The notes beneath the pieces are model-generated. The model had not been told where the DNA came from. It did no database searches and saw only the letters and a list, made by a program, of their open reading frames with translations. The translations under genes and the position numbers were made by a program. Shown piece after piece: positions 19,403 through 27,595 of a stretch of DNA of 64,000 bases (position 1 is its first letter; every line of letters begins with the position of its first letter). Source of the stretch: Selaginella moellendorffii. Taxonomy: Eukaryota; Plantae; Lycopodiophyta. The stretch is taken from NCBI RefSeq assembly GCF_000143415.4, contig NW_003314284.1:1284693-1348692 (forward strand), given 5' to 3'.

Positions 19403-22681
<3,279 letters not shown>

Positions 22682-22736
22682 GGCGTAGCTATCGCGCCAT
22701 GCCCCAGCTCAAAAACCCTAAACCTAGGGACTCAAA

Positions 22737-22750
22737 TTTTGGCGGGAAAA
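22737..22750. promoter_or_regulatory. Overlapping double E2F site TTTTGGCGGGAAAA upstream of MCM3
   Basis: Matches the E2F consensus on both strands (TTTGGCGG and TTTCCCGC), 55 nt upstream of the MCM3 ATG. MCM genes are established E2F targets. Confidence 0.75.
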
Positions 22751-22791
22751 CCCAAAAACTTATTTGACAAAGGAAAAAAGGATCACAACGT

Positions 22792-24702
22792 CTAGTATTG
22801 GATCATTCTTAGCTCGTACTCGCCCGCTGTTGTGATGTAACGCACCCATGGCAATGCTTGGTAGCCGCTCTTCTCTATGATCTTCAAATAGCGAACCTGG
22901 AAGCAAGCGAAACAAACGCAAACTCAAACGAAAACCTTGGAGCTTTTAGCTCGAAGAACTCACCTGGATTCCTGAAACAGTGAAGTAAGGTATCTCAAAC
23001 TTTACTCGAATTGGCGCACGCTTCTCTGGCACACTCTCCTCACTCACAATGCTTGGCAGGCCAAATTGAGCTCTCAACATGTACTCCTGAGCGAAAAAGT
23101 CGTGAGAGTTTGAAAGAAGAAAGGAGAGCGATTGAAGTACCTTGCCGCCGGGGAATGACTTGATCTTCCATACCAAGGCTTCTTTCTCGGGAGCATAGAC
23201 TGATGAGCCCATGGATGTTCTCACGTTGGGTGTGGTGGCATCTGCAGGAAGCGGCAGCTCAATTTCGACATTGGTTGCCGTGCTGCAAAGAGTAGAGAAA
23301 ACATATGAGACTGAAAATGCGAACTATTCAAATACCTGCGTTCTTTGAACTGACTGCGGGCTTTCACTGCGTACTCCACGCGACTCCGAGAATGTCTCTC
23401 GACCTGAGCTTCTACCCATATCAAAGGTCTCACCTGATCAAAGGAATGGTCAGAAAATTAACTCAAACATCGAGGGCGTGTAACAACCTGTGTACTTAGC
23501 CTATATGTCATGAGATCAAAAGCACCATCCGGAGGAATGAAGGATATTGTCCTGTCGTTCTCGAAGCGAGCCAGCCGAACACACCTATCCCCAAAACGTG
23601 GTGACTACAATGTAGCACAATAGGTGTAATGACTTACTGGTGAAATTTGATATCATCCAGGTCGATGGCTTTGCCCTTGGTCGAGCGCCCTTGTGCCTCT
23701 AGAAGAACCCTGTCGTTGAGACCGAGCTTGCATTCCGGCATACCCCTGACAAACAAAAGATTATCCGCTTAGAACTGCAAGAATCAAAGGCAAAAAAAAA
23801 AAAAAAACATACGTCAAGTATGTTCGCATTTTCAAAGCACCGACAACGTCTGAGCGAACCAGCTGACCGTTGCTATTAACAAGAATGTTGACGCTTTCGA
23901 CAACATCGAGAAAAACCTGCAATCCACGATAAAAGCGAGACAATTTAAAACGTAGTTTTTGTACCTCGTTCTTTTTGTAGCGAATGCCTTCACTACGCCA
24001 GGATACTGCATTTGTCACTGCCATGGGAGGACGTTGAGTGATTTCAATCTTGTAAGCATCTGTTTTGATGAACTCGCTCAAAATATTTGCTTCCGTGAAC
24101 TGAGGATATCCGAAGTCCATCATCTCGTCCAAAAGTTCGTACTGCAAATGCAATTAGAAAAATATGAGAAAACAGAACAAACACCGGAGAGTCACGGAGA
24201 AAAAACAAAATTACCACTACAACAAAATTATCTCTCAACGACTCTTCTTCCAGCTCTTCAAAGTAATGCTTAAAAACCTGAAACAGAAACAAAGAACACA
24301 GGTTAATATCGATTTCAACCAGCACTCGTAACTTAAGAGCTCCAAAGAGTATGAGGATACTTTACATCGATAACTCGATGCAGAAACAAAAGGAGACTCG
24401 CAGCATTGCAATTTTGTCTGGATGCCGTCATTACGTACACGTTGTTGTGCTGGACGAAAAGATAAGTCACTCCATCGTCGAAAACAACAGGATCTTGGGA
24501 GCTTGAATCACTCTAGAAAAAAAAAAGAGTACATCCTAGAGCAACCAAACAACAAAATAGAATCTGGACGTACCTCTCCTTCTTGTATCTTGGCAAAAAA
24601 GCGTTCAGCCTGCGCTGCTGATACATCTCCGCGATAGTCTCTCCATACTAAAACCCGACCCTTCATATCTAAAAGAAAGAGTGCTGAGGCAGCACCCGCC
24701 AT
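22792..24702 (-). CDS. AP1M: AP-1 adaptor complex subunit mu (multi-exon)
   Basis: MAGAASALFLLDMKGRVLVWRDYRGDV, YELLDEMMDFGYPQ, VSWRSEGIRYKKNEVFLDV, LVWKIKSFPGGKE, FEIPYFTVSGIQV, WVRYITTAGEYELR. Confidence 0.95.
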
Positions 24703-24764
24703 CGCCTCCTGTTTAATCTCTTTCTCTCTTCCCCCTACGACTAAGTCCCTATGATTTTCCTCTA

Positions 24765-25218
24765 TCAGTTCCTGCTCCTACTTGCCTCGGAGTTTGTGGA
24801 TCCATCGAGCCCGCTACCAGTGCCAACCAATTCCTTGAGAAGCTGGAGTATCAACACAGGTGACGCTTCTAGCTGCATTAGCTCCCACAGCTGCATTCCA
24901 ATCTATAAGCTTCCATACCCTAAAAAAATCGCAATGCTCGAGACAGTACCGTGAGAAAGACGTCCTCTCGGATTTCCAGGCCCGCGAGCTGCGTCAGTTC
25001 CAATACCTTCTGTTCTTCTGCACGAGATCATCCCACAAGAATGTGTGTGAGAGAGGAGACTTCGCCAGATCCAGCGAGAAAACGCGAAGCGAGGCAAGAT
25101 CACTCGCATTGGCGGCCTTTCGGCCCCAATTGCTGGGAGATCCACGCAGCGCGAGGAAATTCCACAGTGCCCGGATCGAGCGCGTACCTGGAGATAGCGC
25201 TCGTGACGCCGCTGCCAT
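24765..25218 (-). CDS. MZT2: MZT2/MOZART2-like protein, 74 aa; exons 25218-25188, 25017-24950, 24890-24765
   Basis: Canonical GT-AG splicing with matched phases gives MAAASRALSPEEQKVLELTQLAGLEIREDVFLTLWELMQLEASPVLILQLLKELVGTGSGLDGSTNSEASRSRN. This aligns without gaps to the recalled MZT2 core (LS.EE....EL.Q.AG..I..DVF..L..L..L...P....Q.LK). Confidence 0.75.
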
Positions 25219-25359
25219 AACCTAGAAATTCCACACAGAGCAAAGGCCATTTCTTCGCCTTTGGCTACCGCGAGCAAATCTCAGCCGTCCAGGTCTCTTG
25301 TACACATCGCAGCCGTTGAGATTCAAAGCTCGAAATATTTTCCGAGGGTTTTGGGAGAG

Positions 25360-27595
25360 ATGGCCGTCGCGGCGCCATGGCGCGCATTCCCATTCTCTTG
25401 GCCGCGCCCTCGAATGCGCGAAATCTCGCATTCTTGTGCTTGCTCGTCGGCGACGCTGCTCCAGATAGAGGATTCATCCGAGGCAAATCGGGCAGCAGTA
25501 GCAGCGGAATCTGAGGAACAGCCGGCTAAGAAGGTACCGTTCTTCCCCAAGCGAGGCCAGGAGCTGGAGCTCGTCTGCGAGAGCCTGGCATTCAAGGGAC
25601 AGGGCGTGTGCAAAGTTTTGGAAACCGGGTATGTGGTCATGTGTGATAGGGCATTGCCGGGAGAACGCTTGATAGCGCGCATCACCAAACGAAAGGGAAG
25701 CTATGCAGAGGTATAAGAGAAAGAAGAAAAATTCTCTGACAGTGTGGGATCGTCTTACGCTGGATGGTTTTGTTTTCTAGGCTCTAAAATTGCGGACGAT
25801 CGTCACACACGACAATGCAGTAACTCCACCGTGCAAATACGCTGAAAGCTGCGGTGGCTGTAGAACACAAAACTTATCTTATGAGGCCCAGCTTGCTGCA
25901 AAGGAAGACCAAGTCCATCAGCTCATTTCACGAGTCGGGAGGTTTGGGAGGAGTGAGGAGTCCGGCAGTGGCAGCTACTTGAAACCGATTTTCCCTTGTG
26001 CAAATCAGTACCACTACAGGAACAAGGTGAAATTCTCCTCTAGCATAGAGGCTTAAAACGCTGAACGTTTTCCTGACACAGGTACGCAGTCCCGGTTGTT
26101 TCCATTCAGGCGTTCTGACGTGCACTTCCCTTAGATGGAGTTCTCATTTGGAACTCGATGGCTGCCACCCAACGAGTTTGTGAAGAACCAGTCACCAGAT
26201 ATTAAGGAGGACTTTGCGCTTGGGCTCCACGTACCTGGGAGCTACGACAAAATCCTGGACATTAGAGAATGCCTTCTGCAACATGACGTTGCGAACCAGG
26301 TGAGCGGGACTGCCAAGATGCTGTTCTACTTTCTTATGGCTTTTTCCTTTTTTTTCTTCTCAAGATACTCTTAGACGTGCATACGTTTTGCGAAACTCAT
26401 CGGAATGATCTTTCAGCATATGATACAAAGACGCATAGCGGGTTTCTTCGTCATCTCACACTGAGATCCGGCCAGTAAGTCTGTGAGTGATACCTCTCGG
26501 TCTTGCCTAATACGTTTTCACCTAGTGACGAACACACAGGGAAGCTGCAAGTGATGGTTAATATCGTAACTTCGGTGCACCATCCCCGTATGATAAAACC
26601 ATTGATAGAGAAGCTTGTAACTTACTCTGAAGTGGTAGGTACATTTCTTTTACATGCTTTTGTATTTTGTTCCTGATGTCCAACTTGCAGACTAGCATTG
26701 TTAATAATGTGACATCCTCAATGGCCAACACAGGGGTTGGTGAAAAACAGTATCTTCTGTATGGAGCTCCAGCCATTACGGAACGTTTGCGTGGCCTCGT
26801 TTTTGAGATTTCTGCCAACTCTTTTTTTCAGACGAACACATCACAGGTAAAATCTAGTCTTAGATTTTGTTGCGCAATCTAACTCAATATTCTTCTGTAG
26901 GCAGAAGTTCTATATGAAGTTGTGGAAAAAGCATGCAACTTGACGGAGGCCTCTAGCGAAATGAATATGCTGGACTTGTTTTGCGGCACGGGCACTATTG
27001 GCCTCTCAATGGCAAATAAGTAAGATATAAACTGTGGCTGTTTTTTGTTGAATCAACCTCCATGTGTAGGGTCAACCATGTTTATGGCTACGAACTTGTC
27101 CAGGAGGCTGTTGCGAACGCCCGGCGCAATGCGAACAGAAACAACATTTTAAACGCGACATTTATTCAGGGAGACCTGAACAAACTTACTTCCGGATTCG
27201 GAGGAAATTTTCCTCGGCCTGATATCATTATTACTGGTTGGGTTTTTTCTCAATGTAGTGCTGTTTGGAATGTTCCTGATGAAAAGAGTTACATTTCTCC
27301 GCAGATCCGAATCGACCTGGCATGCATCCGAAGTTACTACAATTCATCCTGAAGTCCGGCGCTGCAAGGGTAGTGTATGTTTCCTGCAATCCGGCAACAT
27401 GTGCTCGGGACCTTGACGTGCTATGTCACTCCAAGGTAAGAGATGCCGTGAGAACTATCTCCGCTTATTGTTCCGCTTCTGCAGGATGGCTCCGATTTAG
27501 CTGGTGGCTACCGGCTTCTAAGCGTCCAGCCTATAGATATGTTTCCCCATACGCCACACGTCGAGTGTGTCTGCGCGTTGGAACTGAGCAATTGA
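25360..27595 (+). CDS. TrmA/RlmD(RumA)-family RNA (uracil-5)-methyltransferase with TRAM domain, probably organelle-targeted (multi-exon)
   Basis: TRAM-like ELELVCESLAFKGQGV...ALPGE, CKYAESCGGC Fe-S motif, YRNKMEFSF, SANSFFQTN, LDLFCGTGTIG, DPNRPG, YVSCNPAT and DMFPHTPHVECV. Confidence 0.92.

What the first reader, a model, noticed from the sequence alone, without database searches (positions are those of the whole stretch)
24765..25218. Hidden MZT2/MOZART2-like microprotein gene in a land plant
Seen: a 3-exon gene whose spliced product is absent from the ORF track (introns 25187-25018 and 24949-24891, both GT-AG, phases 1 and 0) encodes 74 aa. Its core ALSPEEQKVLELTQLAGLEIREDVFLTLWELMQLEASPVLILQLLKEL aligns without gaps to human MZT2 as I recall it (VLSTEEMELYELAQAAGGAIDPDVFKILVDLLKLNVAPLAVFQMLKSM), with 20/48 identities. 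The match runs across both junctions, which supports the splice model. Established: MZT2 binds the GCP2 N-terminus of the gamma-tubulin ring complex and is usually described as animal-restricted, while angiosperms are known for MZT1/GIP. Inference: seed-free plants may retain an MZT2 module, perhaps tied to centrioles and flagellated sperm, that annotation missed because it is small.
Basis: partly seen in the sequence, partly recalled or inferred. Interest (0 to 1): 0.85.

Follow-up and report, generated by a model that had tools for sequence, protein, structure and literature searches.

The report
Hidden plant MZT2 gene before AP1M
Selaginella really does carry an expressed, unannotated gene for MZT2, a small subunit of the microtubule-nucleating gamma-tubulin ring complex that papers say plants lack; in mosses, liverworts, a probable hornwort and Selaginella it always sits 32-79 bases upstream of the AP-1 mu adaptin gene, apparently on the same mRNA.

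Summary
The minus-strand exons 25218-25188, 25017-24950 and 24890-24765 splice (GT-AG, phases 1 and 0) into a 74-aa ORF. Both junctions appear in public RNA-type assemblies.

The product is a MOZART2/MZT2 family member:
- Pfam PF12926 scores 34.7 bits against a cut-off of 23.3.
- The best matches among solved structures are MZT2A/B only.
- The AlphaFold2 three-helix model superposes on MZT2 in the GCP2-NHD:MZT2 module (Z 6.6, rmsd 1.5 Å).

Homologues of 66-78 aa, with identical intron positions and dN/dS of 0-0.15, occur in mosses, liverworts, a probable hornwort and lycophytes. Databases list them as hypothetical proteins. The papers I read say plants have no MZT2.

The stop codon lies 62 nt upstream of the AP-1 mu (AP1M) start codon, and one 1,638-nt spliced contig carries both complete ORFs. 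The same tandem, with a 32-79 nt spacer, is present in every bryophyte locus examined. This suggests an ancient bicistronic gene like CDC26-TTM3, and it explains why annotation missed MZT2.

Diphasiastrum has a stand-alone copy. Fern AP1M leaders and the region upstream of Klebsormidium AP1M lack the gene.

The proposed link to flagellated sperm is not supported. GCP2 binding, single-molecule bicistrony and translation of both ORFs remain untested.

The parts
25188..25218 (-). MZT2-like exon 1 (coding part): ATG at 25218-25216, 31 nt, ends in phase 1
   Evidence: Joint 25017>25188 in runs X1 and X12. The same exon/intron position occurs in Ceratodon, Marchantia and Sphagnum.
25018..25187 (-). 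Intron 1, 170 nt, GT..AG; retained in one run's contig
   Evidence: spliced in X1 and X12; X5 record 13 runs through it.
24950..25017 (-). MZT2-like exon 2, 68 nt (helix 1 and part of helix 2)
   Evidence: Exon 2 is 68 nt in all four genomes compared.
24891..24949 (-). Intron 2, 59 nt, GT..AG, phase 0
   Evidence: Joint 24890>24950 in all four runs.
24765..24890 (-). MZT2-like exon 3 coding part (rest of helix 2, helix 3, disordered tail), stop codon at 24767-24765
24703..24764 (-). 62-nt purine-rich spacer between the MZT2 stop and the AP1M ATG; contains no ATG
   Evidence: RNA-type contigs run uninterrupted across 24574-24890 in 4 of 4 runs.
22792..24702 (-). AP-1 complex mu subunit (AP1M) coding region, 11 exons, 430 aa. 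It translates exactly to the annotated Selaginella moellendorffii AP-1 mu-2 protein P0071.
   Evidence: Assignment to AP-1 mu rather than AP-2/3/4 mu rests on the moss orthologue.
22737..25221 (-). Extent of one fully spliced 1,638-nt contig (run X12, record 5) that carries both complete ORFs: 3 nt + 225 + 62 + 1293 + 55 nt
   Evidence: tables 5 and 8. The arithmetic was checked against the exon model.

Best explanation
The locus encodes a genuine land-plant orthologue of MZT2 (MOZART2/GCP8). [quoted passage not shown]

In Selaginella the gene is not a free-standing transcription unit. Its three small exons form the upstream cistron of the AP1M (AP-1 clathrin adaptor mu subunit) transcript, and its stop codon lies 62 nt before the AP1M start. 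This MZT2-AP1M tandem predates the split of bryophytes and vascular plants and has been kept under strong purifying selection.

My proposed mechanism has three steps:
1. One promoter makes one spliced mRNA.
2. Ribosomes translate the 74-codon MZT2 ORF.
3. A fraction of ribosomes then reach the AP1M ATG, more likely by post-termination reinitiation than by pure leaky scanning, because ORF1 keeps 2-4 internal ATGs and its start context is not consistently weak.

The MZT2 peptide then acts in trans as a gamma-TuRC subunit.

Shown: gene structure, splicing, family membership, fold, conservation, conserved adjacency, and co-assembly of both ORFs on single RNA-type contigs in several species.

Inferred: a single mRNA molecule, translation of both ORFs, the route of downstream initiation, GCP2 binding, and loss of the cistron in ferns and seed plants.
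For: Family membership:
- Pfam MOZART2 scores 34.7 bits against a cut-off of 23.3.
- All 14 plant homologues hit PF12926 and none hits MOZART1.
- Single-sequence and profile searches of PDB return only MZT2A/B chains, E 1.5e-7 and 8.5e-10.
- The AF2 model has helices at 10-21, 28-39 and 44-55, pLDDT 73.6.
- Its top two Foldseek hits are MZT2 in 7fad and 9h9p: TM 0.82-0.83, rmsd 1.4. VIA-align gives Z 6.6 and 5.8.

Expression: both splice joints are seen.

Conservation:
- Homologues occur in Ceratodon (2 loci), Physcomitrium, Sphagnum, Marchantia, Riccia (2 species), Calypogeia and Diphasiastrum.
- Intron positions and phases are identical in four genomes.
- dN/dS is 0-0.15; for Ceratodon versus Physcomitrium dN is 0 and dS is 0.85.

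Tandem with AP1M:
- Selaginella spacer 62 nt, Ceratodon 72, Marchantia 56, Sphagnum 39.
- Spliced RNA contigs carry both ORFs: L003 (moss metatranscriptome), L012 (P. patens), L014 (probable hornwort) and L004-L009.
- Six of six further moss metagenome loci show the same order.
- Selaginella run X12 has one 1,638-nt contig with both complete ORFs, and contig depths over the two parts are similar in X4, X5 and X12.
- The downstream gene is AP-1 mu: 574 bits to AP-1 mu1 against 309 to AP-2 mu. In the window it equals the annotated S. moellendorffii protein.

Precedent: CDC26-TTM3 is a bicistronic locus conserved in plants and green algae.
Against: - All RNA evidence is from assembled contigs whose RNA nature is only guessed by the tool. 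Contigs can merge overlapping transcripts: X1 record 3 even merges into the divergent + strand gene. No long read, cap site or poly(A) site was seen.
- Genome annotators of Marchantia, Ceratodon, Sphagnum and Physcomitrium list MZT2 and AP1M as two separate genes.
- A 66-78 codon upstream ORF with internal ATGs should strongly depress translation of an essential housekeeping gene. An internal AP1M start site inside the MZT2 gene therefore remains plausible.
- Diphasiastrum has a stand-alone MZT2 with no AP1M within 8 kb, so linkage is not obligatory for function.
- No plant GCP2 was examined, and nothing shows that the protein is made or joins gamma-TuRC.
Confidence: 0.7

Rival explanations
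1. There are two independent but tightly packed transcription units. MZT2 has its own short mRNA that ends in or just after the spacer or in AP1M intron 1. AP1M has its own start site inside or just after the MZT2 gene. The shared contigs are assembly merges of overlapping same-strand transcripts.
For: De Bruijn contigs do merge neighbours: X1 record 3 joins MZT2 exon 1 to the opposite-strand gene. Annotators call two genes in four bryophyte genomes. L004-L009 and P0021 read into intron 1, and X5 retains intron 1, so transcript heterogeneity exists. Diphasiastrum MZT2 works, or at least persists, alone.
Against: A 32-79 nt spacer is too short to hold a poly(A) signal, a promoter and a 5' UTR. 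The adjacency is kept in every bryophyte locus and in both moss paralogue lineages, which simple neighbourhood would not preserve for more than 400 My. Fully spliced contigs with both ORFs recur in independent species and samples. Contig depths are similar over both parts.
Confidence: 0.2
2. The ORF is chiefly a conserved-peptide upstream ORF that tunes AP1M translation in cis. Its resemblance to MZT2 reflects ancestry but no longer a gamma-TuRC function.
For: It occupies the 5' leader of an essential gene, with a constrained short spacer. Peptide-level conservation is also typical of regulatory uORFs. No plant gamma-TuRC proteomics cited in the papers read lists MZT2.
Against: Conservation covers exactly the three helices that form the MZT2:GCP2 module, and the fold is retained. 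In Diphasiastrum the unlinked copy keeps the conserved sequence, while the stretch in front of AP1M looks decayed (5.2 bits; 4 of 1000 shuffles reach that score). That pattern is expected for a trans-acting protein. The published plant gamma-TuRC work cited is from Arabidopsis, which appears to lack the gene.
Confidence: 0.07
3. It is a divergent MOZART1/GIP paralogue that binds GCP3/5/6 N-termini, not an MZT2 orthologue.
For: UniRef names the moss proteins 'Mitotic-spindle organizing protein 1'. The nearest ESM-Atlas clusters by language-model features are plant MOZART1 clusters, scores 0.87-0.89, which the tool rates as leads only. MZT1 and MZT2 modules are structural mimics.
Against: No MOZART1 Pfam hit at E <= 1-10 in any of 14 plant sequences, while 14 of 14 hit MOZART2. 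PDB searches return MZT2 chains only. The structural match to MZT2 has rmsd 1.4-1.5 Å at 38-43% identity. The 9i8m small chain, which I take to be MZT1 (chain identity not verified), matches at rmsd 3.5 Å and 14% identity.
Confidence: 0.03

Closest known systems
Vertebrate MZT2A/MZT2B (GCP8), Pfam PF12926 MOZART2
   Same: The homologous core of about 50 residues is 38-43% identical, passes the family cut-off, and has a three-helix fold superposable on MZT2 in the GCP2-NHD:MZT2 module.
   Different: The plant proteins are 66-78 aa against about 158 aa in human. They lack the long N-terminal lead and most of the disordered C-terminal tail. They are encoded in front of AP1M rather than as a separate gene. 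The partner (GCP2 NHD) and presence in the complex are untested in plants. The literature describes the family as absent from plants.
CDC26-TTM3 bicistronic locus of plants and green algae
   Same: A roughly 65-75 aa subunit of a large cell-division machine is encoded as the upstream ORF of an mRNA whose main ORF is an unrelated housekeeping protein. The arrangement is conserved over deep time. The upstream stop should expose the mRNA to NMD (described).
   Different: The partners differ (gamma-TuRC subunit and AP-1 adaptor). The arrangement is seen here in bryophytes and Selaginella, not in a fern or in Klebsormidium, whereas CDC26-TTM3 extends to angiosperms and chlorophytes. Translation of both ORFs is shown for CDC26-TTM3 and not here.
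Polycistronic loci of green algae (translated by leaky scanning)
   Same: Two protein-coding ORFs lie on one nuclear mRNA with a short inter-ORF spacer.
   Different: Algal ORF1s have weak start contexts and are depleted of other ATGs. Here ORF1 keeps 2-4 internal ATGs, including conserved in-frame Met codons, and often has a purine at -3 and G at +4. Leaky scanning alone therefore fits poorly.
MZT1 / GIP1-GIP2 of plants (PF12554)
   Same: A small three-helix gamma-TuRC microprotein of similar size, known in all plants.
   Different: No sequence match to the MOZART1 profile. MZT1 pairs with GCP3/5/6 N-termini and MZT2 with GCP2.

Membership tests
MOZART2 / MZT2 (PF12926) | Sequence passes the curated family profile threshold | tested here: met
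   34.7 bits against gathering score 23.3, E 1.6e-8, profile positions 25-80 of 91. All 14 plant homologues match.
MOZART2 / MZT2 (PF12926) | Closest characterised relatives are MZT2, not MZT1 or other helical proteins | tested here: met
   PDB phmmer and profile searches give MZT2A/B chains at E 1.5e-7 to 8.5e-10. The next hits are designed helical repeats; there are no MZT1 chains.
MOZART2 / MZT2 (PF12926) | Compact three-helix fold as seen in the MZT2:GCP2-NHD module | tested here: met
   The AF2 model has helices at 10-21, 28-39 and 44-55. 7fad_B gives TM 0.82, rmsd 1.4-1.5 Å, Z 6.6; 9h9p_C gives Z 5.8. Caveat: Z under 8 is common for small helical models, and the Foldseek E-value is only 0.044.
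MOZART2 / MZT2 (PF12926) | Binds the N-terminal helical domain of GCP2 and co-purifies with gamma-TuRC | not testable with these tools
Needs co-IP or multimer modelling.
Conserved protein-coding bicistronic mRNA (CDC26-TTM3 type) | Two conserved protein-coding ORFs, same strand, short spacer, arrangement conserved across lineages | tested here: met
   The spacer is 32-79 nt in Selaginella, three moss lineages, Marchantia, a probable hornwort and 12 environmental moss contigs.
Conserved protein-coding bicistronic mRNA (CDC26-TTM3 type) | Both ORFs reside on one mature mRNA molecule | tested here: inconclusive
   Fully spliced single contigs hold both ORFs (X12 record 5; L003, L012, L014). However, contigs can merge transcripts, and the RNA nature of the Selaginella runs is a guess by the tool.
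Conserved protein-coding bicistronic mRNA (CDC26-TTM3 type) | Both ORFs are translated | not testable with these tools
   No Ribo-seq or proteomics access. dN/dS of 0-0.15 shows selection on the peptide.
MOZART1 / GIP (PF12554) | Match to the MOZART1 profile | tested here: not met
   No PF12554 hit at E <= 10 for the Selaginella protein or E <= 1 for 14 plant homologues. Only a language-model feature similarity below 0.9 was found.
Algal leaky-scanning bicistrons | Weak ORF1 start context and depletion of ATGs before ORF2 | tested here: not met
   There are 2-4 further ATGs inside ORF1 in every species, including conserved in-frame Met codons. Selaginella and Marchantia have G at -3 and G at +4.

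The most novel reading that the evidence does not exclude
MZT2-AP1M is an obligately bicistronic gene more than 450 million years old, the second deeply conserved protein-coding bicistron of land plants after CDC26-TTM3. In bryophytes and Selaginella, the only source of the gamma-TuRC subunit MZT2 is the 5' cistron of the AP-1 adaptor mRNA. AP1M is translated by reinitiation, so output of a microtubule-nucleation factor and of a post-Golgi trafficking factor is coupled; both are needed to build the cell plate. The cistron decayed in the euphyllophyte lineage, with Diphasiastrum caught midway: a stand-alone copy plus a relic in front of AP1M. On this reading plants had a complete MZT1+MZT2 gamma-TuRC and later simplified it.
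Probability: 0.3. Interest if true: 0.85.

Novelty: new variant of a known kind. Interest (0 to 1): 0.72.

Why it matters
- **It corrects the record.** Reviews and primary papers on gamma-TuRC state that MZT2 is missing from plants and confined to deuterostomes. Here it is shown in bryophytes and lycophytes, and molluscs also have it. This changes the inferred ancestral make-up of the plant microtubule nucleator.
- **It is testable.** Physcomitrium and Marchantia are genetically tractable, so the question of what MZT2 does outside centrosomal animal cells becomes directly addressable.
- **It adds a bicistron candidate.** The conserved MZT2-AP1M tandem is a new candidate for a deeply conserved protein-coding bicistronic mRNA in land plants.
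- **It has a practical lesson for annotation.** Conserved microprotein genes can hide in the 5' leaders of housekeeping genes.

Tried and rejected
- **Single-sequence word-indexed search.** It found nothing, although close moss homologues are in that collection. This was a tool sensitivity limit, not absence. The exhaustive phmmer search and a profile search found the homologues.
- **Long proteins P0003 and P0006 (1145 and 1210 aa).** Against the plant profile P0003 scores only E 0.015 and P0006 does not appear. I treat both as chance helical similarity.
- **Fused MZT2 domains in over-long AP1M annotations (Adiantum 549 aa, Closterium 665 aa and others).** None has an MZT2 domain.
- **36-codon uORF in the fern AP1M leader (L017).** It looked vaguely like helix 3, but it scores -0.6 bits and 246 of 1000 shuffles do as well. 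Rejected.
- **Readthrough or frameshift fusion of MZT2 to AP1M.** Rejected because the relative frame differs between species (0, 1 or 2).
- **ESM-Atlas feature search.** It pointed to MOZART1 clusters, and a second search skipping PF12554 gave nothing. Not used as evidence.
- **Adiantum genomic DNA.** Could not be fetched.
- **Fold search library 'atlas'.** Failed three times.
- **Pfam on two exon fragments of the divergent + strand gene.** Gave nothing.
- **Literature searches.** Searches for plant MZT2/GCP8/MOZART2, for Mp1g15950 and for a bicistronic AP1M found no description.

Full report
**1. The observation**

On the minus strand, exons 25218-25188, 25017-24950 and 24890-24765 join into a 225-nt ORF of 74 codons plus stop. 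The two introns are 170 and 59 nt, both GT..AG, with phases 1 and 0. No single six-frame ORF contains the product.

I laid Logan contigs of four public runs, from four studies, on window 21500-26500 (5,001 letters, within the operators' limit). The tool could only guess that these runs are RNA. The intron-2 junction appears in all four runs and the intron-1 junction in two. One run retains intron 1.

The ungapped alignment has 20 identities in 48 positions by my count.

**2. What the protein is**

- Pfam gives one hit, MOZART2 (PF12926): 34.7 bits against a gathering score of 23.3.
- phmmer against all PDB sequences returns only MZT2A/B chains, best E 1.5e-7.
- A profile of 14 plant homologues returns the same chains at about 1e-9 and no MZT1 chain.
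- All 14 plant sequences hit MOZART2 and none hits MOZART1.
- An AlphaFold2 model built on the plant alignment has three helices (10-21, 28-39, 44-55; mean pLDDT 73.6) and a disordered tail.
- Its two best Foldseek matches are MZT2 in the Xenopus GCP2-NTD:Mzt2 crystal structure (7fad_B) and in the human gamma-TuRC (9h9p_C): TM by target 0.82-0.83, rmsd 1.4 Å, 40-42% identity.
- VIA-align gives Z 6.6 and 5.8 for those two. A small chain of 9i8m, probably MZT1, gives Z 5.1 with rmsd 3.5 Å and 14% identity.

For so small a helical domain the structural scores alone would be weak. Together with the sequence statistics, they secure membership in the MZT2 family.

The UniRef auto-name 'Mitotic-spindle organizing protein 1' and an ESM-Atlas feature similarity to MOZART1 clusters are not borne out by any alignment-based test.

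**3. Relatives**

An exhaustive phmmer search of 1.84 billion representatives found 7 proteins at E <= 0.001. A profile search found 48. The plant members are 66-78 aa:

- Mosses: Ceratodon purpureus (two loci), Physcomitrium patens, Sphagnum fallax.
- Liverworts: Marchantia polymorpha (Mp_1g15950), Riccia (two species), Calypogeia fissa.
- Lycophyte: Diphasiastrum complanatum.
- Environmental moss transcripts.

All are labelled hypothetical or uncharacterised.

Intron positions and phases are the same in Selaginella, Ceratodon, Marchantia and Sphagnum: exon 1 is 28-31 nt, exon 2 is 68 nt, and the phases are 1 then 0.

Over the 43-codon helical core, dN/dS is 0-0.15 wherever dS can be estimated. 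Ceratodon versus Physcomitrium has dN = 0 at dS = 0.85.

The remaining hits are animal MZT2s, many from molluscs, so the family is not confined to deuterostomes either.

No fern, seed-plant or algal MZT2 appeared. The searches are limited, however: one uses 50% cluster representatives and the other a word index. The Selaginella protein itself did not surface as its own entry.

**4. The surroundings: a conserved tandem with AP1M**

Sixty-two nucleotides after the stop codon, on the same strand, begins an 11-exon gene (24702-22792). It translates exactly to the annotated S. moellendorffii AP-1 complex subunit mu-2, P0071. This also identifies the genome, in agreement with an earlier scan note. 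The moss orthologue scores 574 bits to AP-1 mu1 against 309 to AP-2 mu.

RNA-type contigs of all four runs cross from MZT2 exon 3 through the spacer into AP1M exon 1. In run X12 one 1,638-nt contig, spliced at all twelve introns, runs from 3 nt before the MZT2 ATG to 55 nt past the AP1M stop.

The same order recurs wherever flanking sequence could be read:

| Locus | Type | Spacer (nt) |
|---|---|---|
| Selaginella (window) | genome | 62 |
| Ceratodon L001 | genome | 72 |
| Marchantia L010/L011 | genome | 56 |
| Sphagnum L013 | genome | 39 |
| L003 (moss metatranscriptome) | spliced transcript contig | 58 |
| L012 (P. patens) | spliced transcript contig | 69 |
| L014 | spliced transcript contig | 79 |
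| L004-L009 (Sphagnum-like) | partly spliced environmental contigs | 32 |
| L021-L026 | moss metagenome contigs | not measured |

The AP1M of L014 is 97.6% identical to the EukProt AP1M of the hornwort Nothoceros, so L014 is probably a hornwort. Both moss paralogue lineages (P0001-type and P0015/P0002-type) keep the arrangement.

The exception is Diphasiastrum. Its conserved MZT2 (L002) has no AP1M within 8 kb downstream. Its AP1M locus on another chromosome (L015) carries only a weak exon-3-like stretch, directly after a splice acceptor and 25 nt before the ATG. That stretch scores 5.2 bits, and 4 of 1000 shuffles reach this score. The pattern looks like duplication followed by decay of the linked copy.

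Two further loci lack the gene:

- Fern AP1M transcripts (L017-L020; their 90% cluster holds Adiantum and Psilotum proteins) have a leader of at least 158 nt with no MZT2 similarity.
- The 6 kb upstream of Klebsormidium AP1M has none.

**5. How it probably works**

A spacer of 32-79 nt cannot hold a terminator, a promoter and a leader. Fully spliced contigs with both ORFs recur in independent species. The simplest reading is therefore one bicistronic mRNA, as for CDC26-TTM3.

Unlike algal bicistrons, which use leaky scanning and show weak ORF1 contexts and ATG depletion, ORF1 here retains 2-4 further ATGs. These include conserved in-frame Met codons. The start context is G at -3 and G at +4 in Selaginella and Marchantia, and C at -3 in mosses. 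I therefore favour post-termination reinitiation, or a mixture with internal start sites. This step is inferred, not shown.

The relative frame of the two ORFs varies between species, which excludes a fusion protein. The MZT2 stop lies upstream of ten exon junctions, so the mRNA should be exposed to NMD, as reported for CDC26-TTM3.

The peptide itself most likely acts in trans on gamma-TuRC through the GCP2 N-terminus, by homology to the vertebrate module. I could not fetch a plant GCP2 to test the partner.

**6. Rivals**

I considered three alternatives:

- Two overlapping transcription units merged by assembly, about 0.2. One Selaginella contig even merges into the divergent + strand gene.
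- A purely cis-acting conserved-peptide uORF, about 0.07.
- A MOZART1 paralogue, about 0.03, which the sequence tests reject.

**7. Comparison with what is known, and novelty**

The papers I read state that MZT2/GCP8 is absent from plants:

- Teixidó-Travesa et al. 2010 (PMC2982109).
- Wieczorek et al. 2020 (PMC7416306).
- Table 1 of Yamada & Goshima 2017, which leaves both the P. patens and the A. thaliana columns blank (PMC5371999).

Later plant papers list only GIP1/MZT1. I found no paper on a plant MZT2, on Mp1g15950 or on an MZT2-AP1M bicistron.

On the other hand, public databases already hold the bryophyte proteins with a precomputed PF12926 hit. The bare existence of the family in land plants is therefore implicit in databases, though not recognised in the literature.

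What is new here:

- The Selaginella gene itself.
- The demonstration that the family spans bryophytes and lycophytes with conserved gene structure.
- The conserved placement as the upstream cistron of AP1M.

I class it as a new variant of a known kind.

**8.

The idea that seed-free plants keep MZT2 for centrioles and flagellated sperm is not supported by what could be tested. The ORF is co-assembled with a housekeeping transcript in several Selaginella runs, and it was not seen in a fern AP1M leader or next to Klebsormidium AP1M. Unlinked copies in ferns, Ginkgo, cycads or algae were not excluded.

**9. Verdict**

This is a real, expressed, conserved plant MZT2 gene, hidden in Selaginella because it lies in the AP1M leader. 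It is probably the first cistron of an ancient bicistronic mRNA. Interest is 0.72. Confidence in the combined explanation is 0.7: about 0.9 or more for family membership and expression, about 0.75 for bicistrony, and about 0.6-0.7 for GCP2 binding.

Noticed in passing
window 25261-26363 (+ strand): A divergently transcribed, spliced gene lies head-to-head with MZT2, with GT..AG joints at 25708/25779, 26024/26133 and 26297/26363. One contig of run X1 runs without a break from MZT2 exon 1 (25188) to 25708, so the 5' ends overlap or share a bidirectional promoter. The first exons look like a TRAM/radical-SAM-type RNA methyltransferase to my eye, but Pfam on two exon fragments found nothing.
   Followed up: partly
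L015 9805-9972 (Diphasiastrum complanatum AP1M locus): Directly after a splice acceptor and 25 nt before the AP1M ATG lies an ORF piece that aligns weakly to MZT2 helix 2-3 (5.2 bits; 4 of 1000 shuffles reach this score). The conserved MZT2 of this species sits alone on another chromosome (L002). This looks like a decaying linked copy after duplication.
   Followed up: partly
L001 5994, L003 49, L012 128 (mosses); L010 5993 (Marchantia): An out-of-frame ATG lies 7 nt (mosses) or 8 nt (Marchantia) upstream of the MZT2 ATG (motif ATGGCGCATGG). It opens a short overlapping ORF and might modulate initiation on the MZT2 ORF.
   Followed up: no
window 24703-24764; L001 7166-7237; L012 354-422: The spacers of Selaginella, Ceratodon and Physcomitrium are purine-rich and share a GAAAGGAGG-like run. 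The Marchantia and Sphagnum spacers do not. The significance is unknown.
   Followed up: no
proteins P0007, P0028-P0047: PF12926 MZT2 proteins are present in many molluscs (bivalves and gastropods). The statement that MZT2 is confined to deuterostomes is therefore outdated for animals as well.
   Followed up: partly
L014 (Logan SRR33208242): This spliced contig carries a 67-aa MZT2 ORF followed by AP1M. Its AP1M is 97.6% identical to the EukProt Nothoceros aenigmaticus (hornwort) protein, so hornworts probably share the arrangement. The sample's species could not be looked up.
   Followed up: partly
L004-L009; protein P0021; window 25018-25187 in run X5: Several contigs read through intron 1 of MZT2 while intron 2 is spliced. 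Such molecules lack the normal MZT2 start and could be pre-mRNA, intron-retention isoforms or products of an internal start site.
   Followed up: no
protein P0179 (EukProt Psilotum nudum AP1M): The source record gives orf=326-1612, i.e. a 325-nt leader in front of fern AP1M. That is long enough to hold an MZT2 ORF, but the transcript could not be read here.
   Followed up: no
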